A stretch of 64,000 bases of DNA from Macrostomum hystrix (taxonomy: Eukaryota; Animalia; Platyhelminthes). Under the pieces are notes generated by a model. The model searched no databases, was not told the origin of the DNA, and saw nothing but the letters and a program-made list of their open reading frames with translations. The first letter of the stretch is position 1. The number at the start of each line of letters is the position of its first letter. The DNA lies in the NCBI GenBank assembly GCA_950097015.1, contig CATNEN010000001.1, positions 8,556,001-8,620,000 of the forward strand, given 5' to 3'. Below, piece after piece: positions 44,732 to 63,790 of the stretch. The position numbers were made by a program, and so were the translations under genes.

Positions 44732-45255
44732 TTAAACCACGTTGCCGCCACTTTTGCGCATCAGACGGGGCGGATGCGGCGGCGGCTGATCAGTGGCCGA
44801 GGACGACGATGAAGGTCCAGCAACTAGGCCCATGGCTTCTTCGTAGCGCGGCGGAAGGTCCTGATTATTGGTGGTGCCATTAGCCAGAAGCTCGTCAAGG
44901 CTGGGCTGGGAGGCTGGCACCGGAGGAGCCGGGCGCCTGGGACCGTGGCCGTGTCCGATGGGAACAACCGACGCGCCCGGACCATCAGCTAGACGTTCAG
45001 CGTGGAGCAGCATAGCCTCCTGCTGGCGGCGGTGGTGCTGTCGGGTTGGTCGCTGAGGCGACGCAGAGCCGTCCTCGCTGCTGCCGGAGCCGGTGCTGCC
45101 ACCGGGTGACAATTTCTTGCCCCGGCGACGATTGACGCGAATGGCAAAGATGGCGACAGCGATTAGGAGGGCCGAGGCGAGGGCGCCGACAAAGACGAAC
45201 ACGATTGGCTCCAGCCAGCGGCGCATTGAAGCCTCATAGGCCGAGGCGGCGATCT
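44732..45255 (-). CDS. MAM receptor constant last exon: TM helix and cytoplasmic tail
   Basis: Acceptor CCGCAG|AG, phase 1; IVFVFVGALASALLIAVAIFAI then RVNRRRGKK; LPPRY. Confidence 0.9.
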
Positions 45256-48200
45256 CTGCGGATTTTGAAAAAAAACGGAGTTGAAGCTTAGTGTACCAGA
45301 GGTCTTGAGTTCGAATCCTAGTCAAGGGAAAATTTAACCATCCGAGCAATACACACGTCTGCCCTGAATTTCTCACTGTGCCCAGGGGGCCAGGCCCCTA
45401 AAGTCTTCTATCGACGACTGTGTGCAAATGTAGCCTCGCAAATGTACATTCGAGCTTAGGAACCTTTGTACGAGAAACCGGACCGATAAGAAACTATATA
45501 TATTATTCTTTTTTTTACTCACGATGGCAAGGTCGATGATAAGCCGTGATATTGTCCACACAGATCCTGGCATTGGGATTGTTAGCCGGAATCGTACCCT
45601 CGAAGATCAGCTAGAGAAAAATTCGAATGAGAGGCACTTTCGTTAAAGCGAAACTTTTAAACAGTAGACGTTTTAAACTTCTGCTGTTTGGTGTAACAGA
45701 CGAAACCCTAAATTAATGTTTACCTTGAAATCTGAATAATCAATCAAATCAACAACAGCCTGTTGCCATTCGGCACTAAAGCCTAAATAGTTTTCATTTC
45801 TAGCCGAGTATTGATTTCGTTGCTGATTGTTGCTAGTCCATAAAGCCTTGTTTTGGCTGCATTGCGTTACGGGTGGTGATAAGTTATCTTTGTTACACAT
45901 GGTAATGCCGGTTGAGTAGAATGTCTCTTGTTATATTTTACACTTTTAAAGGCCTAACAATACTTAGCCTACAGTAGTGTGTTAATGATAGGCTTAAAAG
46001 TAAATCAATCTAACTATACTAAATTAGATTCAAATACTTAGAATAATGATCATAAACGCCAATCCTTTCAATGCGTTAAGGTCTAACAAAAACTTTTTGG
46101 GCAATAAAGTGTGTATCAGACTTTGAAGTAACAAAAATCAATCACCAGAAATACAATAAGTTAATCAAATATTGTTAAGATAATTTGTGCCAAGTTATTA
46201 GCCGTTAGCCGTGTTAGTTAATCAGTATGATTCCGTCTCAAGCATTAGCGCTTTGATTATCAAGTAAAAAAGTGCAACTTAAGCAAAACTTTGCCAGTAA
46301 AATTAGAAAAGCAATCGATAATTATTGATTGCTTTATTGGGAATAAATAATTTGTTAAGAAAGCTAGTTTATTGGACTCAACCGGCATTACCAGAAAACG
46401 CCAGAATTTTGTGTCTCGATGTCCACATTACGACGCTGACAGGAGCTAAAACGTGTAATTCAACATTGCTAGTGTCAACGCTTGTGCTTTCATCTGCCTG
46501 CCTAAACAATTGATATAAATATTTTTGGCAGCAAAGAGGATAAGAGAACCTTAAAGTCTGAGTCAGACTGAAGGTCAACAGTAATTGAAGACCAAGTTGT
46601 TAGTTCATCGAATGATTTGCGATTTGACTGCCACAAAGGACTATTTTGACAGAATATTCCACTACCACCGAGCTGCTTAGATTCAACATTGCGACATGAA
46701 CTGAAAATTGTCATTTATAGTACAGAGACAATAATAAACTGCCATCATTTAGCTTATTTATTGAGTTCTGGTGAATTTGGCAGCGAGAGTCAACAGCTAA
46801 ACACTAAAATAGCAGCGCTTAAATACCTTGAAATCTACAGCGGTCTCTATAGAAACATGAGCCTGGTTCCACAACGACTCCTTTTTTGAAGCAACAGACG
46901 CGGTCGACCAAATTTTGACATTATCACAGGTGACAGAAGTTTTCACCTGACCAGATTCACTACGCTCTGTCTGGTGGCACGATCTATCAGACATTTTTAT
47001 GTATAAAACATTTTTGTACAATTTCGTCTCCTTTAACTAAAACACCTAGTTCAACTGAGCTCATTGGCAGCAAGGATAAAACCATCGCTAAAAATGATAA
47101 TAAAAATAATAACAATTGCAGGAAGGCTGTGGGCAAAGGTACATCATTTGGTGACACTAGACCCGCAACCAGCCAGGACGCAATTCTGCTCATTTCGCTA
47201 ACTCATACATACACGCACACAGATACTGTACGCAGACACATACTCACACAGGTGTGTACATCTGCCCTGACTTTCTCATCGTTAGGCAGTGTATACTCCG
47301 CTCTGCCTTGGAGATTGGCCATCAAGGGCATAAATTGCACGACGAGTCCCCAAGCCTTCTCTCCGCGGCTGCGCCCCAAATAAATTTGGCCTCGCCGCGG
47401 AATCGAGGCGTAATCGAGCTTAGGGACATTGGTGCGAGAGGCAAACGCGTTAAAAGCTCTGCTACCGACCCTCATCGCTAAAAACGAACTTCTACCTTGA
47501 AATCAGCTGCTGAATCAACAGAAACCTGAACATTAGTCCATTGGTTTCTATCAGCTTCTGAGTAAGCCGTTTCAGCAGCAAGACTAGTCCAAATTTTGTC
47601 GCTGTGACAGAGCATAGCTGTTCGAGTCCTGCCACTGTTGTTAACATCAGATTGACTACACGAACTAGAAATCGTGAAATTCATCCGAGCTTGTAAAACT
47701 ACTATCATTAGCCTGGCAGAAATTAAAATACGAATTGCTTCAAAGAACCATCTTGACACCGGAGTTTGACTTGGATTTGAAAATTATAAATTTACCTTGA
47801 AATCGCTACCAGATTTAATCGGAATTGAAACTACACTCCATCTGAGTCTATCAGGATTAGACACGGTTAAACTATGACCAGATGCTGAGCTATTGGTTGA
47901 CCAAATCAGTTTGTTTTTGCACAAAACCGAAGTGAAAATTTCATTTCGTTCAATTTCATTGGCCTGTTGGCAAGATCTAAAATACGTTTGTAGCAAAACT
48001 TTTTGCTAAGAGGGCGAAACTAATTCTAAGAAAAAATCGGAGAATACTTCAAGGTGAGTTTTTCGGAGCTGAAGTGGTTCAATTTAAGATTTTTTGAAGA
48101 ATGTTTGTTATTACCTTAAAATCTCCATTTGATGTTAAATCGACATTGACAATGGACCAAATATTAGCATTGCTAACGGATGGCGCAGTATCCGCACTTG

Positions 48201-51200
48201 TCCACAATCTTTTGTTATCGCACAGAACAGATGTAAATACACCGTCTGGTTTAACGCGATTCGATTGCAGACACGAACTGAGTAAGTTGAGCAAAGTCAA
48301 TTTTTATTGAATGAGTCCTACGGATTACCGAGAATTAGTTAATTAAAGCAGCGAGGAATCCTTATGTCTCAAACCCGTCTAACCCTTTCTAGTAAATAAT
48401 TAAGTCTTTGTCATTCAACATTAAACTAACCTTAAAATCTTGCGAATGCTGAAGATTAATTTGCACTACACGCCAAGCTAAACTAGACAAGCTTGGGTGA
48501 TTTGTAGATTTCCAAACTACCTGGTTGCCGCAGGTGATAAAGTTGTACTCTAAGCCTTTAGTTTCTCGCTGGTTTTGGGTACAGGAACTAAAAATCCAAT
48601 TGAATCATAACTTGTAGAGAAAAAAATTATTTGAACCATTTTGGCAGCTTGGGGAAGACAAACCTAGTAGATGGAGTATTTTTAATTACCTTGAAATCTG
48701 ATTGAAGCTTAAATGTGATAGACACAGATACTAGCTGCCATTTAGAATTTACTAATATGCTGGCAGTGTCAGGTGAGCCTGTTGCTACCCAGACGCGTTC
48801 ATTCTTGCAAGTGTGAGCACTAATAAAACGACCGTTTTCCTGATCCTCAGAGGTTGAGCAAGACCTGATATTTTGAGCAATACAAAAAAGTTTTTTCCCT
48901 GGTTAATTTAAAATCAATTTTATGAATCGATATTTGGAGGAAGACTTCACTGACTTAGTGCCTTAGAAACTAATATTTTACCTTAAAATCGTTTTTCGAA
49001 GTTAGATCAACACTAACAGAAGACCAGTCATTTTTGGTTCCAATACGAACACCAGACTGTCCCATAGTCCATAGTTTTTTGTTGTCGCAAGTCACCGAGG
49101 TGAATAAACCATCTGATTTAACTTGATCAGATTGCAGACATGAGCTACGAAAATTATTTGAAACATTTTTGTTAAATTTTAAATTAAATGTTTTTGTAAG
49201 GCTTTTTGACAGCGGAGAATCGAATCAATGCTCCTTAAAATTTATGGAGACAGTATAAAAAATCACCTTGAAGTCTGGCGAATGCTGCAGACTAACTTGA
49301 ACACTGTGCCACCTTGCTGAGCCACCAGTTAAACTGTCCCGCTGATTATTATTCCAAACTACCTGATTACCGCAGGTAACAAAGTTGTAATTAAGGCCCT
49401 CATTTTGACGATGATCCTGCGTGCATGAGCTGCAATTGTACAATACGACCTAAATTCAGGTCTAAAGAACTGATGCACACGTTCCATTCCCTTGATATAT
49501 ATATATAATTGGCAGCAAGTGAAGCTTTGCATAAAGGTGCGTTCTTCATACCTTATAATCAGATCGATGTTTAAGATCTATAGAAACGGAACCCAACTGC
49601 CACTGTTGAACAGCTTGTCTTTGGCCAACCCAGATTCTTTCATTCTTGCACAGGTGGGCACTAATAAAGCGACCGTTTTCCTGATCCTCAGAAGTTGAAC
49701 ATGATCTAGTTTGTTAAAGAACAACGGTAGGCTTTGACATGACACACATTTCATTTTCAGAGGTCTCAAGGGAAGACTTCAAACGCATATTTAGGCTTCA
49801 ACCTAATGCGTGATAATAAAGTATACTGGAAAACACCCAAACCTTAAAATCAGTCCCAGATTCGAAGGTGACTTGCTGTACTATCCAAGATCCACTTTTA
49901 ATGGAATTAACAGCTGAAACTGAAGCAGATACTGCGTCATCTGAACGCCAGGCCACCTCATTGTGACAGGTGAAAGATTTGATTTCTTTACCCGATCGCT
50001 GACGCATCTTAGTGTTTTCTTGACTACAAGATCTGATAATTATAATTTATGGGTTAATTGTGCTTAAAACTAGGCAAACTTTTCTAAAAATTGACACGAA
50101 GAGCTTCAAGGTTTTCCTATTCGTTTCAAAATTTGTAGTTTCTAAAGACCGACCTTAAAATCTGAGTTGGATTCCAAATCCAGATACTGCTGCAACCAAG
50201 AATCAGGCCGAATTGCACTATTGTCAGTGTCAGGCAATTGAGTGCGCCAGACAATTTCATTGTGACACAGCAGAGACTTGAACTGTTTGCCAGTTTGATG
50301 ACTTAAACTGTTGTTCTCTTGACTGCACGATCTAACATTTTTAAGACATAGTCTTTATAGAATATCGAATTCAAACAGGCCATACAACGGGACAAACTTC
50401 AAGGCCCCTTGTGTATTGAGTAGCTTACTAGAACAGAGTTTAATAATAAAATCCCTCCTTTGAAATTACCTTAAAATCTGAGCCAGTAGGCAAGCTAACA
50501 AAAGCGGAGTACCAAGAACCGACATTGACTCCTGTAGCTAGCATGGAATATTCCGATGTCCACACAACCCGATTATCACACAAAACTGATTTGAAATCGG
50601 CACCCAGTTCATTGCGAACTTTCTGGGTGCAGGAGCTAGGTCAGAAGAAAAAAATAATTTTAGGCAATCATACTCGTATGTTTGCAAAAGAAATCTACGA
50701 AAGAACAATTAGGCTGGGAAGACTTCAGACAATCGATCTTTATTAACCTACGAGATTTACCTTAAAATCACGACCGGTAGCAATATCAACAGATACTGGA
50801 GTCCACTTTGGCTCCGCAGCTCCAACTGGGGACAAAGTTGCCTTCCATAATTTTAGATTCTCACTAGAATGTGTTGAAGTATTTGTAACCGAAAATGTTT
50901 GAATAACTGCTTTTAGTAGTATCATTATTATGAAGGTTGTAAATGATACGCTACATACCAATAGTGACCCGCAACCTCTTGACCAGCCCTCTGCTTTTCC
51001 ATAGAGACGCATGAACTGTTTGATATTTCAATAACAAAATCTGAAATTAACCTCCTTCATTCTGATAGAAATTAGCCATGATAAAATTTTCGTTCTTTGG
51101 CAGAAGGGAAGACCCACTAAGAAAAGTCGAAAGGAATAAATGAAACAAACTCTCTAAAAAAGTCTATGTTACCTTAAAATCTGAATTGTACTTCAAATCG

Positions 51201-54200
51201 ACTGAAACGATATTCCAAGAGCCATCAGCTTTGGCAGAGGATATCCAAACATCTTCATTGCGACACATGTGCACACTGAACGCTTTCTCTTTTGGCTTTG
51301 CCACTGTGCAGGATCTGGTTTTTACATTGTTATGTTAAAGAGCTTTTCTATGAAAAAAAGAAATGAGGATCTGTTGGTAGCGTAAATTTTCGAGCGTAAA
51401 TTTGACAGCAGGAACACTTGCCTTCGAAATTTAACTGCAAAAACTAAGTTAAGAAAACGAAATGCTACCTTGAAATCTGCAGCCTGTCGCAAATCAACAG
51501 AAACTGATTGCCAAATTTGAACGGTACCATCTAAATTCGAGCTAGACCACAGAACGTCACTTTCGCATAGGGATTTTCGTTTCTCGGCACCGGACGATTT
51601 AATGTTACTCGCCACAGTGCAAGACCTGTCGGAACATGTTTAAATCATAGTGCGCAAACTCCTGTTTTAATTTAATAATCCACGAGTTCAAGGTTTGGCC
51701 AGCGGAGAAGAATCGAGCAAGGGTGGTGACAAACCTTAAAATCTGTCTCAGATTCGATGCTAACAGACTGAGTAAGCCAACTGTTACTAAGGCCGGCATT
51801 GTCCTGCAAACTAGTCGAGCTCCATAATTCCCAGTTGTCACAATTTGAAGTGCGCAACTTCTTGTCGCCGTGCGTGATTGCTTTCAATTGCGAGCAAGAT
51901 CTGGGCGAATCGTTTCAAAATATTTCCCATTAAAAGATATTAAACTTCGGCGTAAGATTTTAACAGCGGGAACGCTTACCATTTTTGCACCAATTTCGTG
52001 ACGTACGTACTTAACTATTAAAACAAAACAATTACCTTAAAATCGGTTTCATCACTACCAATAGATATATGGATTGAATTCCAATTTAATGATTGACTAT
52101 AAGTTGAACGCCAAATTTCGACACTCTTGCATAAATGGGACATGACTTTCTGGCCATTGTTGGATAGTTCGGAGTCAGACACGCACGACCTAGAAAATAA
52201 TCCAGAAACTGTTTGTTGACCTGATATAATGAACGATGCAACTGATAATCTATCACAGAAGGAAGACTTCAATATAGGGCTATTCTATAGTGTGTTCTAA
52301 GGTTCTAATTGGCAGTTCTTACAACAGAGAACATGTAATTTATGCAGATATGTGACTGTGTGGTCCTATTTGTCTTAAGCGTCTATTTAAATTCTTAGTC
52401 CACTAGACTCACTTTAAAATCTGCCGCCGATGCCACACTAGCATAAACAGTTTTCCAATCGCTTGTACTACTGCTACTACTTAAAGTAGACGACAGGTCG
52501 GCATCTGAAGAACCGCCGCCAGATTTCCACAATGTGACACTTTTACACAGATGAGAGTTCACCTCTTGACCGTTCTCCAGCTTAGAACCCGACATGCATG
52601 ATCTTTGTTGTGTGGAAATAGAAGAGTTAAATAAACATTTTAATTGAAAAATCATTCCTCTTGTTATTATAAAATTAAGCAGTTGGGAAGAAAGGGCTCG
52701 GAAAGTGCTTGATACGCCATCTAGAATAAATAACTAAATGGATAGAAATAAACCCTTTGTTAATTAGATAATTATTTGGCATACTTGAATGGCAGATAAT
52801 GACTTTTTATCTTATATGCACCAGTTATTTCCACCAATACTCATTTTTATAAAATTCTGTTTTTATTGTTTTGCGCTCCGGTGCAAGGTACCTTGAAGTC
52901 TTCCCCGCTGCCAAATTTGAAAAATCAATGCTTTACTGTAAGTTATATATGTATAATACATCAAATTGCGATAAGCCAATGCACAAAGCAATACATCAAG
53001 TAAGAATACGTAAATAAACAATGAGCATCAGGAAAAATGTTTATTATTAACCATAAAGCTTTGAATCCTAAATACGAGTATTTCTTTCTACGAGCGTAAG
53101 AATTGAGCACATTCAAAAAGCACCTACCCACGCGATCGTTTCAGTAAGGTAAGACTAGACCCTCCGGTAATGTACATTGAGAAATCTAAGCACATTGAGG
53201 CAGCGGACATGCCGCTATCAACTTCTAAGTCGCGTGGGACAGCGGCAACCCAGCCTGGAAACCAAAGCTTCCCAGACAGGGCGGCCTGATTAGCCGGAAT
53301 ATGACTGCCAACTACAGGGAGCAGGCAGGCAGCGTCAGTTCGCATAGCAACCATCTTATTAGTTGCCATGGGAACCTCTATAGAGGTCCAACGCCAAGCA
53401 ACAAGATCGTTAGCTGGATCGTTGGCATAGTTGCACATCCGCTGGCTGGCAAAATCACAGTTGATATCAGTACAACTGACTGCATTTAAGAATATTTAAA
53501 GCGTTTTGTTAATGGAATATTAGATTGATCACGTAACCATATTGCAACGGCAAGGCTCGTTCTCCACATTGAGATTTTAATGTCGAAAATTGTAAAATAG
53601 ACTGAATAAGCCTACCCAAAAGAACGCTTCAACAAGGCCAAATGTACTCCAGGAGTTGCAGCCTCTCTAGATAGTAGTCTATAAGAGAACTGAAGGCACA
53701 TCTGTTCTGAAACATCCCGCCGACTCTCAGCTGTTCGTCTGACAATCCAGTTACTGAGAAAGATGCCAGTGTGTTGGCCGTTAGAACTGCCCAATACGGA
53801 GGCATCGTTTGGAATCATGCAATAGGCAGATGCGCCAGTTTTTGGATCGATAACGGACTTCCAATTGGCCGCCCTATTATAAGGATCGTCACTCCAGGCG
53901 CAAGACATTGGTGAATTCGATTTACACTCGATGGAGGATGCCGAATTGGTAGCTACAACTGAACAATCCATTGCATTTGAATACCATTTAAAATGAACTT
54001 TAAAAACTAAACTATTAAGATGGCTCGTTGCTCCATTTACTTCAGCGAAGAAAAACAATAATTGAAACTAACACCTAGACAATTTTGGGCCAGCTCTGCA
54101 GCTAGTGGAGCAGTCGCAGCTTTTGTACGACGTTTCTAAAGACTGCACAGCTGTTTAGTCCGTAACAAACAAGCTAATGCAAAAAGCATACCCAAATGAA

Positions 54201-57200
54201 CGCTTCAGCAAAGCCAATTGTAGGCCGGACAATCCTAGACTTGTGGGTGCAACAAATTTAAAAGCAAACTCGAGACACATGCTTTGCTGTTGCTGTTGTT
54301 GTTGTGATTGCCTAGCAGCAATCCAACCGCTAATGAAACTTCCTGAGTGGTCTCTAGCAGATGAAAACGCTGCCAAATTCGGAATCAAACAGTAGGAAGA
54401 AGAACGACTAGCTTGATCGATGGTTGCCTTCCAGTTGGCCGCTCGATTAAACGGATAATCACTCCAGGCGCACAGAACTGGGGAACTCGACGCGCAGCCA
54501 ATCATATTGGCAAAAAAGCCGACTAGATTTAAGTAAAAATATCAAAAGCAATTTAACGAAAAAACGCAAACAGGCAAAAATCGATCTAAGACTCGTTGCT
54601 CATAAACATGGGTATTTTTCAGGGTTTAATAATCGCTAACCTTACCCATGGGAACGCTTCAGCAATGCTAATTGCATTCCAGAAATTAAGGAGTCTTCCA
54701 TATTAGCGAATCTATAGACAAACTGGACACACATCTGCTGCGATTCTAGAGAATCTGAATCGTCTGCTTTAGTTATCCAATTGCTAAGAAAGCTACCAGT
54801 GCGAACTGGGGAATCGCCGGCAATTGATCTTGTCGGAATCAGACAATAGGACGATGAGGCCCTAAAGGCGTTAGGATCGATTGCCACCTTCCAATTGGCT
54901 GCTCGATTGAAAGGCGAATCACTCCAAGTGCAAAGTGTGGGCGAACTCGATGAACAATCGATTGACGCGGCTAAGCAACAAGCTTGAATAATTTGCAATA
55001 AACATTTTAAGACTTTTTAAACTATCATTTATCTTTAATCAATAAAATATTTTAAATTTAAGGCTCGTTGCTAACATAAAATTTTAGAAAACATACCCAA
55101 AAGTACGCTTCAACAAAGCCAGTTGCAACCCAGACGAAGCTTCTATTAGTGCATCTGGTGCAACAAACTTATAGATAAACTGTAGACACATCAGCTGCCG
55201 TTGTTCACTTTCCTCCGTTGATGTAATCCAACCGCTAAGAAAGCTACCAGAGTGAGCCTTGCCAGAAGAGCTAAGTGACGACGAAATTGAATGAGACAAT
55301 GCCCTGTTAGGAATAAGGCAGTAAGAAGACGAACGACTGTTAGGATCAATCGAGGCCTTCCAATTAGCGGCACGATTGAATTGACCGTCGCTCCAGGTGC
55401 AAAGAATTGGCGAGCTCGATGAGCAATCAATAGAGACACACTGACCAATCGCTATTTACGAATTAAAAAAATAAAAGTGCGTTGCTGAACCCTTACCATA
55501 ACAAAAACAATTACACAGAATTTTGGCAAGGCTCATTGACAAAGGTGAATCGAAGCGACAGATCGCGCAAATGTTAGCAACTAACTAGTAGCCTACCCAG
55601 AAACTCGCTTTAGTAGACTGAGCCTCGCAGCACTAGGGCTGCCAATGTCTGAAGAATCCTGAAGCCGATAAGAAAACTGGAGACACATTTGATCAACTGG
55701 TCGGCTATTATCAGAATCTGATGCGTCTTTAGCCATCCAAACGCTATGAAACTCTGCAACTAAGCCAGCTGCACTGCTACCGCTTGAAACTCGACGCTTA
55801 ATAGGCACGAGACAATAAGACGATGGGACAGATGGACTCGAGCTAGTCGGATCTAAAGTCATCTTCCAAGCGCCATCTTTTTTGTCAAGATCGTTTCGCC
55901 AGGTGCAACTAGTTGAGGCACTCGAATAACAGGCAAGACTATCATCGGATAAAAGTGTTGCTGAAGACAGTTCGTAGATGAAAACATGCTTTAAACAAAA
56001 AATAAATTAAAAAATTAGACTCGGCTCATTGCTCCAAACGCTATACAATTTTGTGATAGTTTTTTTACCCCCAATTTCGCTTCAGTAGACTGAGCGATCC
56101 TTCACGCGATGCGGCTAGATAGCTGAACGCAAGACACATACTAGCCGGTGAGTGCTCGGTGCCACCCGATGAGCCAGCTGTAATCCAATGACTTTCAAAG
56201 CGGCCAATTAAAAAGGATTGCTGCTGAGGTACACTTGGAATCAGACAGAGATGAGATCTGCTGGTTCCGATTGAATTTCTGTCGCCCGCGGCGTCAAGAG
56301 CGGACACCCAATGAGCGCCTTTATTGTCAAAGTCATCGCGCCAACTGCAATGCCCAGCAGAGCTGCATGCTAACTGATCTAGTGTTGCTTGGGTTGCAAA
56401 ACTTCCTGTTTTATGGTGCAGAATATAATCAATTCTTACTTAATTAAACTAGTTATTTTAAGTGAACACGAAAGAAACACGTTTTGGCAAAAGCTCGTTG
56501 CTCCTAAAATCCGGAAAACATTTCTTCGTACCCACGACTCCTTTTTAGCAAGCTCAATCCAACAGTGCCAACTTGATGGCCATCTAAACTCATGGATTGG
56601 TCGATGCGATAGGCAAAGCTAAGGCACATATCGCCAGAATTGGAGGACGATGGCACGTGTCTGCCAGTGAGCCACTGGCTAACAAATCGGGCAACAGCTG
56701 CAGGCCGATTGTTGCCAGACCCCGATCCGGGGCCAAGTTCCGGTACGAGACAACGCGGAGACTGAAAAGCAGCTGACGAATGCAACGAAGCTCGCCAATG
56801 AGCGTCGATGTTGTCCTGATCATCGCGCCATCTACACGGAGTGGCTGAGGCGCTGATACAGCTTAGCTCAGGTACAGGGATAGAAGCCAAACAATTTTCT
56901 AAAAAAATCATAAACAAACTGCCTTTTTTTGTGTGTAGCCTACTGGAAATAAGCGTTACAAAGGCTTCACAAGGCTCGTTGCGGTATTTTATAAACAGTC
57001 TACGTTCCATAAAATACGTAGGCGTCCCTGATCCCATACCCGAGACTACGCTTTAGAAGATTAAGTGTGGCTTGACCAGCAGTCCAGTAAGCGAACTGGA
57101 GACACATCTGGTAATTGTTAGGCGTATTGGAAGCGAGCACAGTTGGACTGACAAACTGGCCACTGGCATCAGCTCCAATAGTAGCTGCGAAAGCAGACTG

Positions 57201-60200
57201 AGGAACAAGGCACAATCCAGTGCTGCCACCAATGACCGAACTGACATCGGCCAGTGTCCAATGAAGGCGACTAAAAACATCATTTAGCCAGGCGCAGTGA
57301 CCACGAGCGGTGCACTGTAGATCGACTCTTGTTGCTGTAGAAACACAAAGAGATCAATTAATGCAACAATAAACAAGCGCGACGCTATTGGAAAAGGCTC
57401 GTTGCTTCCAGAGATCTACTAGCATACAGAGCAAACAGCAAACAAAAAGACAAGAAATTAGCAACTAAATTTCTACCCTCGATTTCTTCGGAGCAGCTGC
57501 AGGTCGACACCGGAAGACTGCTGCTCGCTAACTAGATATCGGAAGTGCAAACAACCAACGCTGGTGTCGGCAACAAAACGGCTAACAAAGCGCGCCTTTG
57601 TTGGAAGATTAATCGCCGATGGATCTCTGATTAAACAATAGTGCGTTTGGAAACGAGCATTTTCAGTCACGGTAGCCAGTTGCCAGTGTGAATCAGTGTT
57701 GTAACTATCGTCCAGCCAATAGCAGCGCGATTTACTCTCGCAGTGCAACTGCTTAATAGCCAGAGTATCGGACTCACAGTTCACTAAGCAAGTAGGAGTT
57801 AAAGGACAGATTTTATCAGGAATGTACAGCCAAAAGCTAAATGTAAACAAGCATTGCAAGGATTTGTTGCTCCATTCAATTCTGTACGCTAATTCATATT
57901 AGTAACGGATTTTTACCCAGAGTGACGCTTAAGCAGCTGCAGCGAAGGAGCATCGACATTGACAAGCCCCTCGGTGTCAGATGCCGAATGCGCAAGCTGA
58001 TAGCTAAACTGCAGACAAGCCGACTGAATTTGTTCGGCAAGAAATAGGCTAACAAAGCGAGCTGACACTGACAAAGGGATAACAATGCTCGGACTGTTTC
58101 TAACCATGCAGAATGCAGATCTGTGTAGAGCAGAATTAGGCAACGCTTGAACAGCAGCAAGTTTCCAATGGGCCTTTGTATTATAGCCATTATCATCGCT
58201 CCATAGACAAGTATCGACGCCGTCACTGTGACAATTCAACGCCTTGATGACCCGACTCGAATCGCCATTAATACTAGACAACTTAACTGCTAAAAGAAAG
58301 CCGATGTACTTTTTATCGTATTTCTTTCTTAATTATAATAAACTAAGTTTCTAACAAGGCTCGTTGCAGGAAGTTTCGATTTAAATAAAAAAACTGATTC
58401 TCCTTACCCAGAATTTCGTTTCAACAATTGCAGCTGACTATCCTGTCCTACGAGTTGATAGGCAAACTGCATACAACCCTGACTAATAGATCCGCTAGCA
58501 ATGAAGAGGCTAACGAAACGAGCCGACACTAGCGAACGGGCGCCACCGCCTGTGACAACTGCGCAATAGCTGCTGCGATAAGTGGTGGCAGCAGCGCTAC
58601 CACCAGTGTCCAATCGTGTTTCGGCAATGCTAGCTAGTTTCCAGTGTGCATCTGTATTATAGCCAATATCGTTGAACCAATTGCAAGATTGTGTGAGGCT
58701 ACTAGAGCTGCCGCCGCCACTGCTGCTGCTACATGACAACTGGCTAATGGCCGCTTGACCGTTCAGTGGCGAGGATTCTAGCCTAGCTGCAGATTTTTTC
58801 AATTTAATTTAATAAACCATTCTTCCCACGATTCTACTTTTTAGCGAAGGCTCGTTGCTACACTAAATCACAAGCCATATTACCTTTTTCTACTACATAA
58901 AACAAAGATTGATAAGCCAATTTTCTAACCCAGATGAGCGTCTTAGTAGAGCCAACATTGGACGATCGTCGGTAGAATCGGCGCCAATTTGAATGCCTCG
59001 ATCGACGCGGTAGCCAAATGACAAGCAGAGACCCAGACTGCGACCCGAGTTGCGAACCCAGTCGCTTAGCAACCGGCCAGAGATAGGAACGGAAGTTGCA
59101 GGAATCAAACCAGCTGTGCACCAACTGTTAGTGACAACTGACTTGGACTTTGATAATGAAGAAGCATCGCCATTGTGAATAGCGAAACGACGCCATTCCA
59201 ATTCACGATTGTAGCCATCGTTTGACCAGCGATCCGTTACTAATGACTCTTCAATTGCTGCTGGACCAGAGGCTGTCGCTGTGCACAGAGTTATATCAAG
59301 TTTAAGTACTTTTTTTCAGGAAATTTCGTTTTCATACGGCACTAAAAGAGGGCAGACTGACTCGCTGCTCCATTGTGCTAAGCGGAATATTACTGGAACA
59401 GTTGGGTTCCAACTATTTAAGCTTCGCTTGAGCCTCGGACTCCTGAGAGAGGGAGAGAGAGGTCTGAAGTTCGAGTCTTCGAAGCCAAAAAAGGAAACAA
59501 CTTGCGCCCTTGAGTGAGACACTTAATCAGCCCATCCAGATATAAAATTGGTACCAGTACCGGAATCAATATTCCACGGACTGTACAGCTGAACGTAGTA
59601 GTGTCTTTGAATGTGGCTGCGTATCACATAATCAAACTAAATAAAATTGATTCTTTGCAATGATAGCTGCAGGTGCTTACACAGGCACACGCTCACAGGG
59701 GTGTACATCTGACCCGACTTTCTCATGGTCAGGCAGTGCACACTCATTGCGGCTTGGCGGTTGGCCGCGGATTCGAACTCAGGAAGCTCAATCTAACTCA
59801 CCCGTGAGCACTTTTCAACAAAGCCAATTGCGGCCTGTCATCAGACAAATCAAGCTCATCCAATGGAACAAAGACTCGATAAACAAACGACAAACAGCGA
59901 GCATTGGCCTGACGATCGACTCCAGCCGTCCACCAGGGACTCTGCAGTCTAGCTGCCCCGCTGCCCTGCAGGCAGACAGCCTGAGTGGCGGCCTCAGTCA
60001 GGTGTCTGACCTGCCAGGAACTGCCAGGGCGCCAGGCCAAATCTACCCAGTTGCAGGCAATGGACGAGCTGTGAGACATCTGCTCAGAACTGGGCCGGTT
60101 CTCAAAATCACAGACGGCTGCGTGATTTAGTACCGAAGTTACCGCTAAACATGAAAAATACACCAAATTTCATTTACAATAAAAAAACTTTACAGACAGA

Positions 60201-60589
60201 AAAGTTAAATAACGCAATATTTTGGCTGCGAATTTTATTACTACATTACTAATCAGACACAAGAATAGACAATACGAAGGTAAATTAATTAGTTAATTAG
60301 TTAATTATTAGCATATTTATAGTGATTCTAGTTTAGTGCTAAATAGCACAATTTTGAGCCATAATCAGCTATTTATTGAACACTCTGCCCCATTCTAAAA
60401 TTACAATCAACAGTTTAAAACTTGGACGAATGGAGCAACGAGCCTTGCCAAAAAACTGCTAGTAAATTAAAAAATTTCAATAACTAACAACTGCGTAAAT
60501 AAAACTGAAAATTTCTTACCTGGGGCTCCGACTAGAAGAAGTAGAAAAAGCACCAAGGAGGCCGGGACCTTAAGCGACGAAGAAAACAT
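44732..60589 (-). CDS. Type I membrane protein with one MAM-like domain encoded by two mutually exclusive exon arrays (14 A x 20 B)
   Basis: Exon 1 (signal peptide) + one A + one B + 45610-45523 + 45255-44732 gives one open frame of roughly 400 aa with the MAM pattern CDFE..C.W...CLSF.Y...W...W....V......FKLIFEG...ICVDNI...PC, then a TM helix. Confidence 0.9.
45523..45610 (-). CDS. MAM receptor constant exon (domain C-terminus)
   Basis: TCTCTAG|CTG...CATC|GTGAGT; LIFEGTIPANNPNARICVDNITAYHRPCH; phase 0 in, phase 1 out. Confidence 0.9.
45724..46445 (-). CDS. Variable cassette B20, split in two (46445-46392 + 45856-45724)
   Basis: SCQRRNVDIETQNSGVF-C-QNKALW...DYSDFK; internal intron TG|GTAATG...TGCAG|C. 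Confidence 0.75.
46550..46700 (-). CDS. Variable exon B19
   Basis: AG|N SCRNVESK...GIFCQNSPLW...SDFK|GT. Confidence 0.85.
46827..46983 (-). CDS. Variable exon B18
   Basis: AG|N SCHQTERS...VTCDNVKIW...VDFK|GT. Confidence 0.85.
47496..47664 (-). CDS. Variable exon B17
   Basis: AG|N SCSQSDVN...LCHSDKIW...ADFK|GT. Confidence 0.85.
47796..47976 (-). CDS. Variable exon B16
   Basis: AG|N SCQQANEI...LCKNKLIW...SDFK|GT. Confidence 0.85.
48115..48277 (-). CDS. Variable exon B15
   Basis: AG|N SCLQSNRV...LCDNKRLW...GDFK|GT. Confidence 0.85.
48431..48587 (-). CDS. Variable exon B14
   Basis: AG|N SCTQNQRE...TCGNQVVW...QDFK|GT (below the ORF-track threshold). Confidence 0.85.
48690..48864 (-). CDS. Variable exon B13
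   Basis: AG|N SCSTSEDQ...TCKNERVW...SDFK|GT. Confidence 0.85.
48982..49144 (-). CDS. Variable exon B12
   Basis: AG|N SCLQSDQV...TCDNKKLW...NDFK|GT. Confidence 0.85.
49267..49429 (-). CDS. Variable exon B11
   Basis: AG|N SCTQDHRQ...TCGNQVVW...PDFK|GT. Confidence 0.85.
49552..49705 (-). CDS. Variable exon B10
   Basis: AG|N SCSTSEDQ...LCKNERIW...SDYK|GT. Confidence 0.85.
49843..50032 (-). CDS. Variable exon B9
   Basis: AG|N SCSQENTK...TCHNEVAW...TDFK|GT. Confidence 0.85.
50154..50331 (-). CDS. Variable exon B8
   Basis: AG|N SCSQENNS...LCHNEIVW...SDFK|GT. Confidence 0.85.
50470..50635 (-). CDS. Variable exon B7
   Basis: AG|N SCTQKVRN...LCDNRVVW...SDFK|GT. Confidence 0.85.
50761..51015 (-). 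CDS. Variable cassette B6, split in two (51015-50959 + 50863-50761)
   Basis: SCVSMEKQRAGQEVAGHY-C-ENLKLW...RDFK; internal 95-nt intron TG|GTATGT...TTCTAG|T. Confidence 0.8.
51173..51314 (-). CDS. Variable exon B5
   Basis: AG|N SCTVAKPK...MCRNEDVW...SDFK|GT. Confidence 0.85.
51469..51625 (-). CDS. Variable exon B4
   Basis: AG|N SCTVASNI...LCESDVLW...ADFK|GT. Confidence 0.85.
51735..51900 (-). CDS. Variable exon B3
   Basis: AG|N SCSQLKAI...NCDNWELW...TDFK|GT. Confidence 0.85.
52036..52189 (-). CDS. Variable exon B2
   Basis: AG|N SCVSDSEL...LCKSVEIW...TDFK|GT. Confidence 0.85.
52413..52602 (-). CDS. Variable exon B1
   Basis: AG|N SCMSGSKL...LCKSVTLW...ADFK|GT. Confidence 0.85.
52891..52916 (-). 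promoter_or_regulatory. Docking site for cluster B (RNA AUUUGGCAGCGGGGAAGACUUCAAGG)
   Basis: Single copy, reverse-complementary to the motif found upstream of the B exons. Confidence 0.85.
53128..53479 (-). CDS. Variable exon A14
   Basis: SCTDINCDFASQRMCNY...MCLDFSM...LLKRSR GG|GT. Confidence 0.85.
53616..53958 (-). CDS. Variable exon A13
   Basis: IECKSNSPMSCAWSDD...MCLQFSY...LLKRSF GG|GT; alternative in-frame acceptor at 53952. Confidence 0.85.
54192..54522 (-). CDS. Variable exon A12
   Basis: IGCASSSPVLCAWSD...MCLEFAF...LLKRSF GG|GT. Confidence 0.85.
54646..54970 (-). CDS. Variable exon A11
   Basis: IDCSSSSPTLCTWSD...MCVQFVY...LLKRSH GG|GT. Confidence 0.85.
55097..55451 (-). CDS. Variable exon A10
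   Basis: IDCSSSSPILCTWSD...MCLQFIY...LLKRTF GG|GT. Confidence 0.85.
55597..55960 (-). CDS. Variable exon A9
   Basis: LACYSSASTSCTWRND...MCLQFSY...LLKRVS GG|GT. Confidence 0.85.
56069..56405 (-). CDS. Variable exon A8
   Basis: LACSSAGHCSWRDD...MCLAFSY...LLKRNW GG|GT. Confidence 0.85.
56532..56898 (-). CDS. Variable exon A7
   Basis: LSCISASATPCRWRDD...MCLSFAY...LLKRSR GG|GT. Confidence 0.85.
57040..57334 (-). CDS. Variable exon A6
   Basis: LQCTARGHCAWLND...MCLQFAY...LLKRSL GG|GT. Confidence 0.85.
57477..57783 (-). CDS. Variable exon A5
   Basis: LHCESKSRCYWLDD...GCLHFRY...LLRRNR GG|GT. Confidence 0.85.
57917..58289 (-). CDS. Variable exon A4
   Basis: LNCHSDGVDTCLWSDD...ACLQFSY...LLKRHS GG|GT; TAGCAG tandem acceptor (58289 or 58286). 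Confidence 0.85.
58408..58786 (-). CDS. Variable exon A3
   Basis: LSC...SCNWFND...GCMQFAY...LLKRNS GG|GT. Confidence 0.85.
58930..59278 (-). CDS. Variable exon A2
   Basis: DRWSNDGYNRELEW...LCLSFGY...LLRRSS GG|GT. Confidence 0.8.
59802..60144 (-). CDS. Variable exon A1
   Basis: VCDFE...ACNW...ARLQSPW...RCLSFVY...LLKSAH GG|GT; most canonical MAM start. Confidence 0.85.
60428..60454 (-). promoter_or_regulatory. Docking site for cluster A (RNA UUUUUGGCAAGGCUCGUUGCUCCAUUC)
   Basis: Single copy about 65-90 nt into intron 1, reverse-complementary to 13 selector motifs. Confidence 0.9.
60520..60589 (-). CDS. MAM receptor exon 1: signal peptide
   Basis: MFSSSLKVPASLVLFLLLLVGAP G|GTAAG, phase 1. 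Confidence 0.85.
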
Positions 60590-60729
60590 GATTAATTAAT
60601 TGATTTTTATATCAGACGATATAGTTTGAGTTTCTGCTCTTGTCTTGCTGTCGCTTTTGTGATGACGGCTGTTGCAGTTAGAGATTGCAGAGAAAAGCTG
60701 CGCTGCAAATAAATCAGGGGAATATTATG

Positions 60730-63615: not shown

Positions 63616-63790
63616 TTAATAAGAAGCCAGCTTAGACAAGGCGTGTTTCAACTTCTCAGCGGCTAGAGCACAGTCCTCTCTACTCAGATCATTGTGCGTC
63701 AGCATTCGAATATTGCGCTCGGAAACTGCCGGCGCGCGCAGCCTAATTTTACAGGCGTCTGTGGGCTGAAGTTGTGGCGGGATGAAGGCC
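63616..63790 (-). CDS. Last exon of a gene, possibly low-specificity threonine aldolase
   Basis: Acceptor CCTTCAG|GCC; IRMLTHNDLSRED resembles the aldolase C-terminal R.VTH.D.S.ED; the rest of the gene lies outside the window. Confidence 0.5.

What the first reader, a model, noticed from the sequence alone, without database searches (positions are those of the whole stretch)
44732..60589. Dscam-like hypervariable receptor built on a MAM domain: 14 x 20 mutually exclusive exons, up to 280 isoforms
Seen: one signal-peptide exon, 14 paralogous exons (all phase 1 in, ending L(K/R)xxx-GG|GT in phase 2), 20 paralogous cassettes (AG|N-Ser-Cys ... D(F/Y)K|GT, phase 2 in and 0 out), then single constant exons for the domain end, TM and tail. 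Joining two exons of the same cluster shifts the frame, while any A+B pair gives a complete MAM-like domain. Known: MAM domains mediate homophilic adhesion (e.g. type IIB RPTPs, meprins), and exon-array diversification is the hallmark of arthropod Dscam1. Inference: this is an independently evolved cell-identity, self-recognition or immune receptor system. I do not know of a described MAM gene with this design, but could not search the literature.
Basis: partly seen in the sequence, partly recalled or inferred. Interest (0 to 1): 0.97.

Follow-up and report, generated by a model that had tools for sequence, protein, structure and literature searches.

The report
Flatworm MAM receptor with swappable exons
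A Macrostomum flatworm gene builds its one outer protein domain from one of 14 versions of a first piece and one of 20 of a second (up to 280 forms), apparently chosen by the RNA-pairing trick known from insect Dscam1; database proteins suggest flukes and tapeworms have the same gene.

Summary
A minus-strand gene (60589-44732) has a signal-peptide exon, 14 paralogous A exons, 20 paralogous B exons, one constant exon and a transmembrane/tail exon. All 34 variable exons have lengths of 1 mod 3. A after A, or B after B, meets a stop within 1-24 codons.

Transcript-derived contigs from one public study join exon 1 directly to five A exons. They join A exons directly to B exons in eight different pairs, and join four B exons directly to the constant exon. 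One frame-shifted B2-B20 joint is the only exception seen.

Each cluster has its own single docking site, complementary to a selector 52-93 nt upstream of nearly every variable exon. Mean duplex energies are -30 and -28 kcal/mol, against -13 and -17 for shuffled docks.

The spliced M. lignano orthologue (A1+B3) passes Pfam MAM, and its model matches solved MAM domains. The gene is single-copy here. Serial half-MAM units in misannotated fluke, tapeworm and monogenean proteins suggest the array is phylum-wide.

I found no paper describing it. The scan noted docking/selector arrays in other genes of this genome, but this MAM gene nowhere else. The gene's function is untested.

The parts
60520..60589 (-). 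Exon 1: start codon and signal peptide, 70 nt, phase 1 out
   Evidence: Its 3' end is found as the loose end joined to the acceptors of A8, A9, A10, A12 and A13.
60430..60451 (-). Docking site of cluster A (TTGGCAAGGCTCGTTGCTCCAT), 69 nt downstream of the exon 1 donor
   Evidence: It is the unique optimum in intron 1: mean duplex -30 kcal/mol to the 13 inter-A introns, against an intron median of -9.
59802..60144 (-). A1 (343 nt); no selector upstream
   Evidence: Orthologue of the A part of M. lignano P0026, 52% identity.
59358..59373 (-). Selector A2
   Evidence: 15/16 pairs, -31.3 kcal/mol
58930..59278 (-). A2 (349 nt; acceptor may be 59308; weak donor GG|gttaga; lacks the two N-terminal Cys)
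   Evidence: Orthologue in M. lignano P0065, 55% identity.
58847..58863 (-). Selector A3
   Evidence: 16/17 pairs
58408..58753 (-). A3 (346 nt)
   Evidence: Donor joined to B5 in run X3. 74% identical to its M. lignano orthologue.
58351..58367 (-). Selector A4
   Evidence: 17/17 pairs
57917..58289 (-). A4 (373 nt)
   Evidence: Pfam MAM 21.4 bits, profile positions 7-88.
57864..57875 (-). Selector A5 (split helix)
   Evidence: -25.8 kcal/mol
57477..57783 (-). A5 (307 nt)
   Evidence: Donor joined to B6 in run X1.
57391..57406 (-). Selector A6
57040..57334 (-). A6 (295 nt)
56966..56982 (-). Selector A7
56532..56898 (-). A7 (367 nt)
56489..56504 (-). Selector A8
   Evidence: -36.0 kcal/mol
56069..56405 (-). 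A8 (337 nt)
   Evidence: Acceptor joined to exon 1 in runs X2 and X4. 67% identical to its M. lignano orthologue in P0064.
56022..56036 (-). Selector A9
55597..55960 (-). A9 (364 nt)
   Evidence: Acceptor joined to exon 1 (X1). Donor joined to B6, the joint 51015<->55597 in X3.
55523..55540 (-). Selector A10
   Evidence: 17/18 pairs
55097..55451 (-). A10 (355 nt)
   Evidence: Acceptor joined to exon 1 (X2). Donor joined to B5 (X1 joint, X4 loose end) and to B14 (X2).
55059..55072 (-). Selector A11
54646..54982 (-). A11 (337 nt; acceptor 54982 or 54970)
54587..54601 (-). Selector A12
54192..54522 (-). A12 (331 nt)
   Evidence: Acceptor joined to exon 1 (X1, X3). Donor joined to B1 and to B19 in X3.
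54020..54036 (-). Selector A13
   Evidence: 16/17 pairs
53616..53958 (-). A13 (343 nt)
   Evidence: Acceptor joined to exon 1 (X4). Donor joined to B2, a joint in X3.
53547..53561 (-). Selector A14
   Evidence: -35.5 kcal/mol
53128..53479 (-). A14 (352 nt)
   Evidence: Pfam MAM 15.6 bits, profile positions 1-28.
52887..52915 (-). Docking site of cluster B (TTTGGCAGCGGGGAAGACTTCAAGGTACC) in the A14-B1 intron. It contains ag|CGGGGAAGACTTCAAG|gt (52907-52892), which looks like the relic 3' end of a B exon.
   Evidence: It is the unique optimum in its intron: mean -27.8 kcal/mol against a median of -10.8. No read evidence that the 16 nt are used as an exon.
52677..52696 (-). Possible weak selector for B1
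   Evidence: -23.4 kcal/mol, 74 nt upstream of the acceptor. Not clearly above background.
52413..52602 (-). B1 (190 nt)
   Evidence: Acceptor joined to the A12 donor in X3.
52259..52276 (-). Selector B2
   Evidence: 17/18 pairs
52036..52189 (-). B2 (154 nt)
   Evidence: Acceptor joined to A13 (X3). Donor joined to the constant exon (X2, X3), and once to B20a (X4).
51959..51974 (-). Selector B3
51735..51900 (-). B3 (166 nt)
   Evidence: 64% identical to the B part of M. lignano P0026.
51700..51714 (-). Selector B4
   Evidence: -32.5 kcal/mol
51469..51625 (-). B4 (157 nt)
   Evidence: Donor joined to the constant exon in X1, X3 and X4.
51401..51416 (-). Selector B5
51173..51314 (-). B5 (142 nt)
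   Evidence: Acceptor joined to A10 (X1, X4) and A3 (X3). Donor joined to the constant exon (X1, X2, X4).
51096..51115 (-). Selector B6
   Evidence: 19/20 pairs
50959..51015 (-). B6, first part (57 nt)
   Evidence: Acceptor joined to A9 (X3) and A5 (X1). Internal 95-nt intron removed in X1, X2 and X4.
50761..50863 (-). B6, second part (103 nt)
50713..50727 (-). Selector B7
50470..50635 (-). B7 (166 nt)
   Evidence: Donor joined to the constant exon in X1. 57% identical to a B unit in M. lignano P0064.
50384..50405 (-). Selector B8
   Evidence: 21/22 pairs, -35.5 kcal/mol
50154..50331 (-). B8 (178 nt)
50102..50112 (-). Selector B9
49843..50032 (-). B9 (190 nt)
49768..49783 (-). Selector B10
49552..49705 (-). 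B10 (154 nt; ends DYK)
49508..49519 (-). Selector B11
49267..49429 (-). B11 (163 nt)
49205..49219 (-). Selector B12
   Evidence: 15/15 pairs
48982..49144 (-). B12 (163 nt)
48936..48949 (-). Selector B13
48690..48864 (-). B13 (175 nt)
48640..48659 (-). Selector B14 (GTCTTCCCC-AA-GCTGCCAAA, with a 2-nt bulge)
   Evidence: -34.6 kcal/mol
48431..48587 (-). B14 (157 nt)
   Evidence: Acceptor joined to the A10 donor in X2.
48346..48358 (-). Selector B15
48115..48277 (-). B15 (163 nt)
48038..48055 (-). Selector B16
   Evidence: 17/18 pairs
47796..47976 (-). B16 (181 nt)
47752..47764 (-). Selector B17 (an alternative split helix lies at 47750-47711)
   Evidence: Weakest of the B set, -22.3 kcal/mol.
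47496..47664 (-). B17 (169 nt)
47064..47079 (-). Selector B18
46827..46983 (-). B18 (157 nt)
46776..46788 (-). Selector B19
   Evidence: 13/13 pairs
46550..46700 (-). B19 (151 nt)
   Evidence: Acceptor joined to the A12 donor in X3.
46524..46540 (-). Selector B20
   Evidence: 16/17 pairs
46392..46445 (-). B20, first part (54 nt)
   Evidence: Acceptor seen joined to the B2 donor in X4, a frame-shifted product. Donor TG|gtaatg lies in the same Cys codon as in B6.
45724..45856 (-). B20, second part (133 nt)
45523..45610 (-). Constant exon (88 nt, phase 0 in, phase 1 out): C-terminal strands of the MAM domain (LIFEGTIPANNPNARICVDNITAYHRPCH)
   Evidence: Its start is the loose end at the donors of B2, B4, B5 and B7. 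97-100% identical to M. lignano.
44732..45255 (-). Last coding exon: stalk, transmembrane helix, cytoplasmic tail with PPRY and RRPAPPVP motifs, stop codon
   Evidence: 68-83% identical to M. lignano P0026.

Best explanation
This is one single-copy gene for a small type I membrane protein: a signal peptide, one MAM domain, a TM helix and a proline-rich tail of about 135 aa. The MAM domain is assembled from three exons. An A exon (1 of 14) supplies roughly the first seven strands, MAM profile positions about 1-91. A B exon (1 of 20) supplies the next two or three strands. One constant exon supplies the last two strands.

Shown:
- All 34 variable exons are intact, and their frames allow only one A plus one B.
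- In transcript-derived contigs, exon 1 splices directly to individual A exons, A exons to individual B exons, and B exons to the constant exon.
- At least 7 A and 9 B exons are used, in at least 8 different pairs.

Inferred mechanism: exon choice works as in the Dscam1 exon 6 cluster.
- Each cluster has one docking site in the intron upstream of the array: A at 60451-60430, B at 52915-52887.
- Each variable exon except the first of its cluster has a complementary selector 52-93 nt upstream of its acceptor.
- Only one selector can occupy the dock at a time. That loops out the intervening exons and activates one acceptor.
- All other acceptors must be held silent by default. This repression is inferred.
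- The 1-mod-3 exon lengths act as a fail-safe, because double inclusion or skipping creates early stop codons that would mark the mRNA for decay.

Inferred function: a cell-surface recognition molecule whose binding face is diversified combinatorially within one domain, up to 280 forms. Conserved Cys/Trp/beta-strand framework alternates with loops that vary greatly in sequence and length. My most likely guess is isoform-dependent adhesion or recognition between cells, as MAM domains do in RPTPmu. This step has no direct evidence.
For: - Exon table, phases and stops.
- Splicing, from four samples of one study, with every loose end mapped back uniquely. Joints A9->B6, A10->B5 and A13->B2. Loose ends A3->B5, A5->B6, A10->B14, A10->B5, A12->B1 and A12->B19. 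Exon 1 joined to A8, A9, A10, A12 and A13. B2, B4, B5 and B7 joined to the constant exon.
- Docking/selector. Dock A against the A introns gives -30.1 kcal/mol, against -12.9+-1.2 for shuffled docks and -14.1 on the B introns. Dock B against the B introns gives -27.7, against -16.8+-1.0 and -17.0. Both docks are the unique optimum of their intron.
- The selector core is nearly invariant, although the exons have diverged to a median of 55% nt identity.
- MAM: A exons hit PF00629 positions 7-91 just below threshold. The A profile hits only the neuropilin-1 MAM domain in the PDB. The spliced orthologue P0026 scores 32.3 bits against a cut-off of 26.4. Its AF2 model matches meprin, SR-C, neuropilin-1 (TM 0.66) and RPTPmu MAM domains at E 7e-9 to 1e-6.
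- Single copy in this genome.
- One-to-one exon orthology with M. lignano: A1 52%, A2 55%, A3 74%, A8 67%, B3 64%, B7 57%, against about 20-35% between paralogues. The constant exon is 97% identical.
Against: - The reads are assembled contigs of runs not on record as RNA. Their RNA origin is inferred from GT..AG joints at the predicted boundaries.
- Contigs give no quantities and come from one study.
- Only a 6-kb middle stretch could be laid, so 7 A and 11 B exons have no splice evidence yet.
- Introns are covered about as well as exons. One 3,084-nt contig is collinear with the genome, so it is unspliced RNA or DNA carry-over.
- One B2->B20 joint shows that exclusion is not absolute.
- RNA pairing is computed, not tested, and no second species' introns were available for covariation.
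- A1 has no selector, and B1 has only a doubtful one.
- Function: there are no data. The homodimer prediction gave no verdict.
Confidence: 0.8

Rival explanations
1. The architecture is the same, but the diversity serves binding of foreign or varied ligands (pathogen, food, mate or sperm recognition), or fixed tissue- and stage-specific isoforms. It would not be a stochastic homophilic cell-identity code.
For: MAM domains also bind heterologous partners, as in the neuropilin, meprin and scavenger receptor C hits. Variable exons diverge faster between species (52-74% identity) than the constant exon (97%), as expected for an evolving recognition surface. The homodimer prediction gave no support, which is not evidence either way.
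Against: Nothing here speaks against it. One-to-one exon orthology between species, and retention of the gene in parasites with very different life styles, argue for a conserved internal role rather than a fast arms race.
Confidence: 0.4
2. The exons are mutually exclusive, but the choice is not made by dock-selector pairing. The conserved intron motif would be a protein-binding element copied along with each exon duplication.
For: The selectors are paralogous and sit at a fixed distance (52-93 nt) from each acceptor, as a duplicated protein-binding site would. No mutational test exists.
Against: This does not explain why one site per cluster, outside the repeats, is the exact complement. That site pairs over 18 nt for cluster A and up to 22 nt for cluster B. 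The two clusters use unrelated, non-cross-reacting sequences. The B selectors are staggered over different parts of one 29-nt dock.
Confidence: 0.1
3. Most of the 34 exons are decaying relics, and only a few A/B pairs make protein.
For: A2 has a weak donor and lacks two Cys. Seven A and eleven B exons have no splice evidence in the stretch that could be laid.
Against: All 34 exons are open in frame, while the shifted frames hold stops within 24 codons. Seven A and nine B exons are seen spliced in only four small runs. A1, A2, A3, A8, B3 and B7 have conserved orthologues in M. lignano, the odd A2 among them.
Confidence: 0.05
4. A multi-MAM-domain protein, with the exons spliced in series as public gene models of flatworms suggest.
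For: Database models such as S. curassoni A0A183KA81 (1,941 aa) and M. lignano A0A1I8GW98 string the units together.
Against: Each unit covers only MAM positions 1-85. Serial joining shifts the frame into stops. The contigs join A directly to B and B directly to the constant exon. The M. lignano models also fuse neighbouring genes.
Confidence: 0.01

Closest known systems
Arthropod Dscam1, especially its exon 6 cluster (docking site after the constitutive exon, one selector before each variant)
   Same: Tandem arrays of paralogous exons used one at a time. More than one cluster per gene, giving combinatorial diversity. Variable exons encode part of an extracellular domain. There is a single upstream docking site with one complementary selector in front of each variant, and the selectors cover overlapping parts of the dock (Dscam literature listed, e.g. 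PMC3535345, PMC8791459).
   Different: The fold is MAM, not immunoglobulin, and there is no sequence relationship. Both clusters diversify the same single domain. The two clusters abut with no constitutive exon between them, so the donor that pairs with a B exon is itself variable. The scale is 280 forms rather than tens of thousands. The ectodomain is a single domain. Homophilic binding and stochastic choice are not shown.
MAM-domain surface proteins (RPTPmu/kappa, meprins, neuropilins, MDGA, MALRD1, insect scavenger receptor C)
   Same: Pfam MAM match above threshold in the spliced orthologue. The model superposes on the meprin, neuropilin-1, SR-C and RPTPmu MAM domains.
   Different: None of these is known to me, or found in the library searches, to have its MAM domain split into arrays of alternative exons. 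This protein has no other ectodomain module. The flatworm family carries a distinctive LxLL(K/R)xxG end to the A part, lying exactly at the exon border.
Other docking/selector mutually exclusive clusters (14-3-3zeta, Mhc, srp, MRP1 in insects; ATE1 in mammals), and the duplication model of Ivanov & Pervouchine 2018 (PMC6071210)
   Same: Competing RNA pairings with one docking site. The selectors appear to have been copied with each exon duplication. The B10-12 / B13-15 triplet duplication fits origin by tandem duplication.
   Different: Far more variants, two linked clusters, and a different phylum. The B dock itself looks like the relic 3' end of a B exon. I did not find that feature described.
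Other exon arrays noted by this scan in the same Macrostomum genome (s1-394527/394528, s1-291350)
   Same: Tandem mutually exclusive exons with dock/selector signals in a flatworm.
   Different: Those are single clusters of 7-13 short exons in genes of unknown function. I did not re-test them.

Membership tests
MAM domain (Pfam PF00629) | Match to the Pfam MAM profile at or above the gathering score (26.4 bits) | tested here: met
Single window exons are partial domains and stay just below the cut-off: A3 24.5, A4 21.4 and A14 15.6 bits, profile positions 1-91. The spliced M. lignano orthologue P0026 scores 32.3 bits. Its constant exon is identical to the window's, and its A and B parts are orthologous to A1 and B3.
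MAM domain (Pfam PF00629) | Jelly-roll beta-sandwich fold that superposes on solved MAM domains | tested here: met
   AF2 model of P0026, with ectodomain pLDDT mostly 60-90. Foldseek top hits are meprin beta/alpha (E 7e-9), the SR-C MAM, the neuropilin-1 MAM (TM 0.66) and RPTPmu MAM-Ig. The model is of the orthologue, with a shallow alignment for the B and constant parts.
MAM domain (Pfam PF00629) | Conserved cysteine framework | tested here: inconclusive
   The A exons keep up to 4 Cys (two invariant, two in at least 90%), the B exons 2 invariant Cys and the constant exon 2. Disulfide pairing was not determined. A2 lacks two of them.
Dscam1-type mutually exclusive exon cluster with competing RNA pairing (mechanistic class) | Tandem paralogous exons with identical entry and exit phases | tested here: met
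   14 A exons (phase 1 in, 2 out) and 20 B exons (phase 2 in, 0 out). All lengths are 1 mod 3.
Dscam1-type mutually exclusive exon cluster with competing RNA pairing (mechanistic class) | One and only one exon of a cluster in the mature mRNA | tested here: met
   Contig joints and loose ends skip all intervening paralogues in 8 A/B pairs, 5 exon1->A joints and 4 B->constant joints. There is one exception, B2->B20. This is contig-level evidence from one study, not quantitative, and no single full-length molecule was read.
Dscam1-type mutually exclusive exon cluster with competing RNA pairing (mechanistic class) | A single docking site complementary to a selector next to each variant | tested here: met
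   13 of 13 (A2-A14) and 19 of 19 (B2-B20) introns have a selector. The pairing is cluster-specific and lies 8-14 SD beyond shuffled docks.
Dscam1-type mutually exclusive exon cluster with competing RNA pairing (mechanistic class) | Pairing is required for exon choice (disruptive and compensatory mutations) | not testable with these tools
   Needs minigenes or genome editing.
Dscam family (homology) | Ig/FNIII ectodomain homologous to Dscam | tested here: not met
   Pfam finds only MAM, and the fold hits are MAM or Eph-LBD jelly rolls. It is an analogue, not a member.
Isoform-specific homophilic recognition receptors (functional class: Dscam1, clustered protocadherins) | Isoform-matched trans binding and stochastic per-cell isoform sets | not testable with these tools
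   The homodimer prediction of P0026 residues 25-236 returned 'no answer'. No single-cell or binding data are available.

The most novel reading that the evidence does not exclude
Flatworms as a phylum (macrostomids, monogeneans, flukes including schistosomes, and tapeworms including Echinococcus) possess an ancient hypervariable surface receptor of their own. It is a single MAM domain diversified combinatorially by two abutting arrays of mutually exclusive exons. The arrays are run by two separate docking/selector RNA codes. The receptor gives cells individual surface identities for self/non-self or neuronal recognition. This would be a second, independent invention of the Dscam1 principle on a different fold. 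It is hidden so far because gene predictors string the exons together as 'multi-MAM' proteins.
Probability: 0.35. Interest if true: 0.95.

Novelty: new variant of a known kind. Interest (0 to 1): 0.88.

Why it matters
Dscam1 is the textbook case of one gene making a large repertoire of surface receptors, and it has been treated as an arthropod speciality. Here the same logic appears in another phylum and on an unrelated fold: exon arrays, frame rules and competing RNA pairings. It comes with transcript support, which makes convergent evolution of this design directly testable.

Macrostomum lignano is transgenic- and RNAi-tractable, so dock/selector mutagenesis and loss-of-function tests are feasible.

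The family signature recurs in public protein models of schistosomes, liver and lung flukes and tapeworms. Those genes are probably misannotated. A variable surface protein of major parasites may therefore have been overlooked.

The design also adds two new features to the known repertoire. Two variable clusters lie inside a single domain with no constitutive exon between them. One docking site looks like a recycled exon end.

Tried and rejected
1. Aligning P0026 with the A and B exons together (A3). MAFFT placed the A exons on the B region, so the alignment was discarded. A4, without B exons, was used for folding.
2. The search for homologous proteins with P0026 found only itself, so no further full-length spliced isoforms are in that database.
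The genomic arrays of Paragonimus, Schistosoma and Echinococcus could not be fetched. Their exon counts, phases and docks are untested, and the parasite claim rests on protein models only.
4. Complex prediction of two copies of P0026 residues 25-236 returned 'no answer'. It is not evidence for or against homophilic binding.
5. My first B6 and B20 models, made by ORF extension in the DFK frame, were wrong.
6. Micro-exon reading of 52907-52892. It is frame-compatible with skipping cluster B, and has an AG acceptor and a GT donor, but no joint or loose end was listed there. I treat it as a docking site and exon relic, not a used exon.
7. Steric hindrance and U2/U12 incompatibility as the exclusion mechanism. 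The introns are 102-233 nt with ordinary GT-AG ends, so neither applies.
8. Literature searches found no description of this gene or design: MAM + Dscam + mutually exclusive; Macrostomum + mutually exclusive; docking/selector + flatworm; MAM + Schistosoma; Mlig029915; mutually exclusive exons + Platyhelminthes. The library lacks most subscription journals.
Exons were searched one by one by reference, and the database orthologue P0026 served as the spliced proxy.
10. Read laying was limited to 6 kb and one call.

Full report
**1. What is there**

The window is eukaryotic. Earlier scan notes call the genome a Macrostomum flatworm. My own data agree: the closest proteins are from M. lignano at 52-97% identity, and the assembly is 220 Mb in 42 contigs.

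A gene runs on the minus strand from the ATG at 60589 to the stop at 44732.
- Exon 1 (60589-60520, 70 nt) encodes a signal peptide and ends CCCCAG|gtaag in phase 1.
- Fourteen paralogous A exons follow (295-373 nt). Each ends L-x-L-L-(K/R)-x-x-GG|GT.
- Twenty paralogous B exons follow (142-190 nt). Each begins ag|N-TCN-TGY (Gly-Ser-Cys once joined) and ends D-(F/Y)-K|GT.
- One 88-nt constant exon follows (45610-45523, LIFEG...CVDNITAYHRPCH).
- A last exon from 45255 holds a transmembrane helix and a proline-rich tail.
- B6 and B20 are each split by an intron in phase 2 of their second Cys codon. For B6, the removal of its 95-nt intron is seen in three runs.

**2. Frame logic**

All 34 variable exons have lengths of 1 mod 3 and are open in their own frame. 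Read in the frame left by a preceding exon of the same cluster, every A exon meets a stop within 1-23 codons and every B exon within 2-24 codons. An A exon joined straight to the constant exon gives an immediate stop. Only exon1 + one A + one B + constant + tail is translatable.

**3. Are the exons really used one at a time?**

The only public runs that hold the stretch are four samples of one study. Their library type is not on record. Their assembled contigs carry GT..AG-type joints exactly at my predicted boundaries, so at least part of them is transcript-derived. On the one 6-kb stretch I could lay (50460-56459) I found the following.
- Joints: A9->B6, A10->B5 and A13->B2.
- Loose ends, each of which I mapped back to a unique place in the window: A3->B5, A5->B6, A10->B14, A10->B5 again, A12->B1 and A12->B19.
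- The 3' end of exon 1 on the acceptors of A8, A9, A10, A12 and A13.
- The start of the constant exon on the donors of B2, B4, B5 and B7.

So at least 7 A and 9 B exons are used, in at least 8 different pairs, always skipping every intervening paralogue. A10 and A12 each appear with two B exons. B5 and B6 each appear with two A exons.

Exceptions and caveats:
- One contig joins B2 to the first part of B20. That product is frame-shifted, so exclusion is not absolute.
- One contig leaves B3 five bases past its donor and continues in the intron after B9. It is probably chimeric at a shared 14-mer.
- Introns are covered about as well as exons, including one 3,084-nt collinear contig. This means unspliced RNA or DNA carry-over is present.
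- Contigs give no abundances.

**4. How the choice is probably made**

The inter-A introns (108-233 nt, one of 523 nt) are otherwise unalike. Each holds a near-invariant motif, consensus GGAGCAACGAGCCTTGCC, 56-93 nt upstream of the next acceptor. Intron 1 holds its exact reverse complement once, at 60451-60430, 69 nt after the exon 1 donor.
- RNAduplex energies of this dock with the 13 introns average -30.1 kcal/mol (range -23.5 to -36.0).
- Shuffled docks give -12.9 +- 1.2, and the same dock on the B introns gives -14.1.
- A sliding window shows the dock is the unique optimum of intron 1.

Cluster B has a second, unrelated code. A 29-nt dock lies at 52915-52887 in the A14-B1 intron. Selectors lie 52-87 nt upstream of B2-B20 and pair with different, overlapping parts of the dock.
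- The mean energy is -27.7 kcal/mol, against -16.8 +- 1.0 for shuffled docks and -17.0 on the A introns.
- A1 has no selector, and B1 has only a doubtful one.

This is the architecture described for the Dscam1 exon 6 cluster (papers listed). The selector core stays conserved while the exons themselves have drifted to a median of 55% nucleotide identity, which argues for selection on the pairing. That pairing is required for choice, and that unselected acceptors are repressed by default, are inferences.

The B dock contains ag|CGGGGAAGACTTCAAG|gt, which reads G-E-D-F-K like the end of a B exon. It looks like a recycled exon end. I saw no read evidence that it is spliced as a micro-exon.

**5. 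What the protein is**

- Exon by exon, the A exons hit Pfam MAM positions 1-91 just under threshold: 24.5, 21.4 and 15.6 bits against a cut-off of 26.4.
- A profile of the 14 A exons hits only the neuropilin-1 MAM domain among solved structures, E 0.09.
- A profile search of 1.84 billion representatives returned 60 proteins.
- One of them, M. lignano PAA93052.1 (P0026, 422 aa), is a correctly spliced orthologue. It has a signal peptide, an A1-like part, a B3-like part, a constant exon identical to the window's, and a tail 68-83% identical.
- P0026 passes Pfam MAM with 32.3 bits.
- Its AlphaFold model has ectodomain pLDDT mostly 60-90. Foldseek ranks meprin, scavenger receptor C, neuropilin-1 (TM 0.66) and RPTPmu MAM domains first, at E 7e-9 to 1e-6.

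In the model, A supplies seven strands, B two to three and the constant exon two. One A, one B and the constant exon therefore make one MAM domain.

The A and B alignments show an invariant Cys/Trp/hydrophobic framework interrupted by loops that vary strongly in sequence and length.

**6. Evolution**

- The A profile finds only these 14 exons in the whole genome, so the gene is single-copy.
- Individual exons have one-to-one orthologues in M. lignano: A1 52%, A2 55%, A3 74%, A8 67%, B3 64% and B7 57%. Paralogues share only about 20-35%. The repertoire therefore predates the split of the two species.
- Synteny is kept: a Beta_elim_lyase gene lies upstream and BUD13 downstream.
- B10-11-12 and B13-14-15 are a duplicated triplet.

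Beyond Macrostomum, the family signature is an A unit covering only MAM positions 1-85 and ending LxLL(K/R/H)xxG. It recurs in series in protein models from three groups.
- Trematodes: Paragonimus, Schistosoma (at least 13 units in one S. curassoni model), Opisthorchis, Calicophoron, Echinostoma, Trichobilharzia and Heterobilharzia.
- Cestodes: Dibothriocephalus, Spirometra, Hymenolepis, Hydatigera and Echinococcus.
- A monogenean: Protopolystoma.

B-like units follow the A units in two Paragonimus models and one Echinococcus model. Non-flatworm hits (hemichordate, nemertean, aphid) match only the generic MAM part.

I read those parasite models as misannotated exon arrays. I could not fetch their DNA, so this remains inference.

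**7. Function**

This step is unknown and inferred only.
- The protein is a small single-pass surface molecule.
- Its tail motifs are conserved between the two Macrostomum species: PPRY and RRPAPPVP, candidate WW- and SH3-binding sites on general knowledge.
- MAM domains mediate homophilic adhesion in RPTPmu and protein-protein contacts elsewhere (general knowledge).
- A combinatorially varied binding face suggests a recognition code between cells, about 35-40%, or a varied ligand or pathogen binder, about 40%.
- The homodimer prediction returned no verdict.

**8. Novelty**

Nine full-text searches found no description of a MAM gene with exon arrays, of this gene, or of docking/selector splicing in flatworms.

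The scan has noted dock/selector arrays in other genes of this same genome. I did not re-test them, and none of them is this gene.

The mechanism class is known from insects. The phylum, the fold, the two abutting clusters within one domain and the exon-derived dock are new. I therefore rate it a new variant of a known kind.

Noticed in passing
window 60729-63269: A 2.5-kb satellite with a 16-nt basic period (higher-order periods of 32 and 48 nt, about 150 copies) begins 140 nt upstream of the gene's start codon. In the + frame it reads as the MGSQxDGIxVGWDLS repeats in the ORF list.
   Followed up: partly
window 46984-47495 and 59279-59801; further copies at 20049-20374, 38065-38415, 25221-25500, 23979-24238, 6773-7075, 42433-42593: The only two long introns inside the arrays (A1-A2 and B17-B18) each hold a copy of a dispersed repeat of about 350 nt, 73-87% identical between copies. 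The selectors of A2 and B18 lie downstream of the insert, at the usual distance from the acceptor.
   Followed up: partly
window 63628-63768 (-) and 39864-42133 (-): Neighbours are a Beta_elim_lyase (threonine-aldolase-like) gene upstream and a BUD13 homologue downstream, as in M. lignano. UniProt models A0A1I8GW98, A0A1I8GP08 and A0A1I8J1G4 wrongly fuse these genes to serial A/B exons.
   Followed up: partly
window 52887-52915: The cluster B docking site looks like the 3' end of a B exon, with its own AG and GT (G-E-D-F-K|gt). The B selectors that pair with its 3' half could also pair, through G-U wobbles, with the real GAYTTYAAG|gt ends of B exons. I did not analyse what that would do to splicing.
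   Followed up: partly
window 51730 / 49837 (run X2) and 52036 / 46445 (run X4): Two odd contigs. One leaves B3 five bases past its donor and continues in the intron after B9, with a shared 14-mer at the switch; it is probably chimeric. The other joins the B2 donor to the first half of B20, giving a frame-shifted two-B product.
   Followed up: partly
window 51469-54524: A 3,084-nt contig in run X1 starts with 28 nt of exon 1 spliced to A12. It then runs collinear with the genome, unspliced, through A13, A14 and B1-B4. Introns are covered about as deeply as exons in all four runs. This could be abundant unspliced RNA, graph-assembly paths or DNA carry-over; it is not resolved.
   Followed up: no
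window 48431-49705: B10-B11-B12 and B13-B14-B15 are a duplicated three-exon block. Their pairwise nt identities are 67-70%, the highest in the array.
   Followed up: partly
window 44732-45255: The cytoplasmic tail keeps a PPRY motif and an RRPAPPVP stretch between this species and M. lignano, while neighbouring low-complexity runs differ. They are candidate WW- and SH3-binding sites.
   Followed up: no
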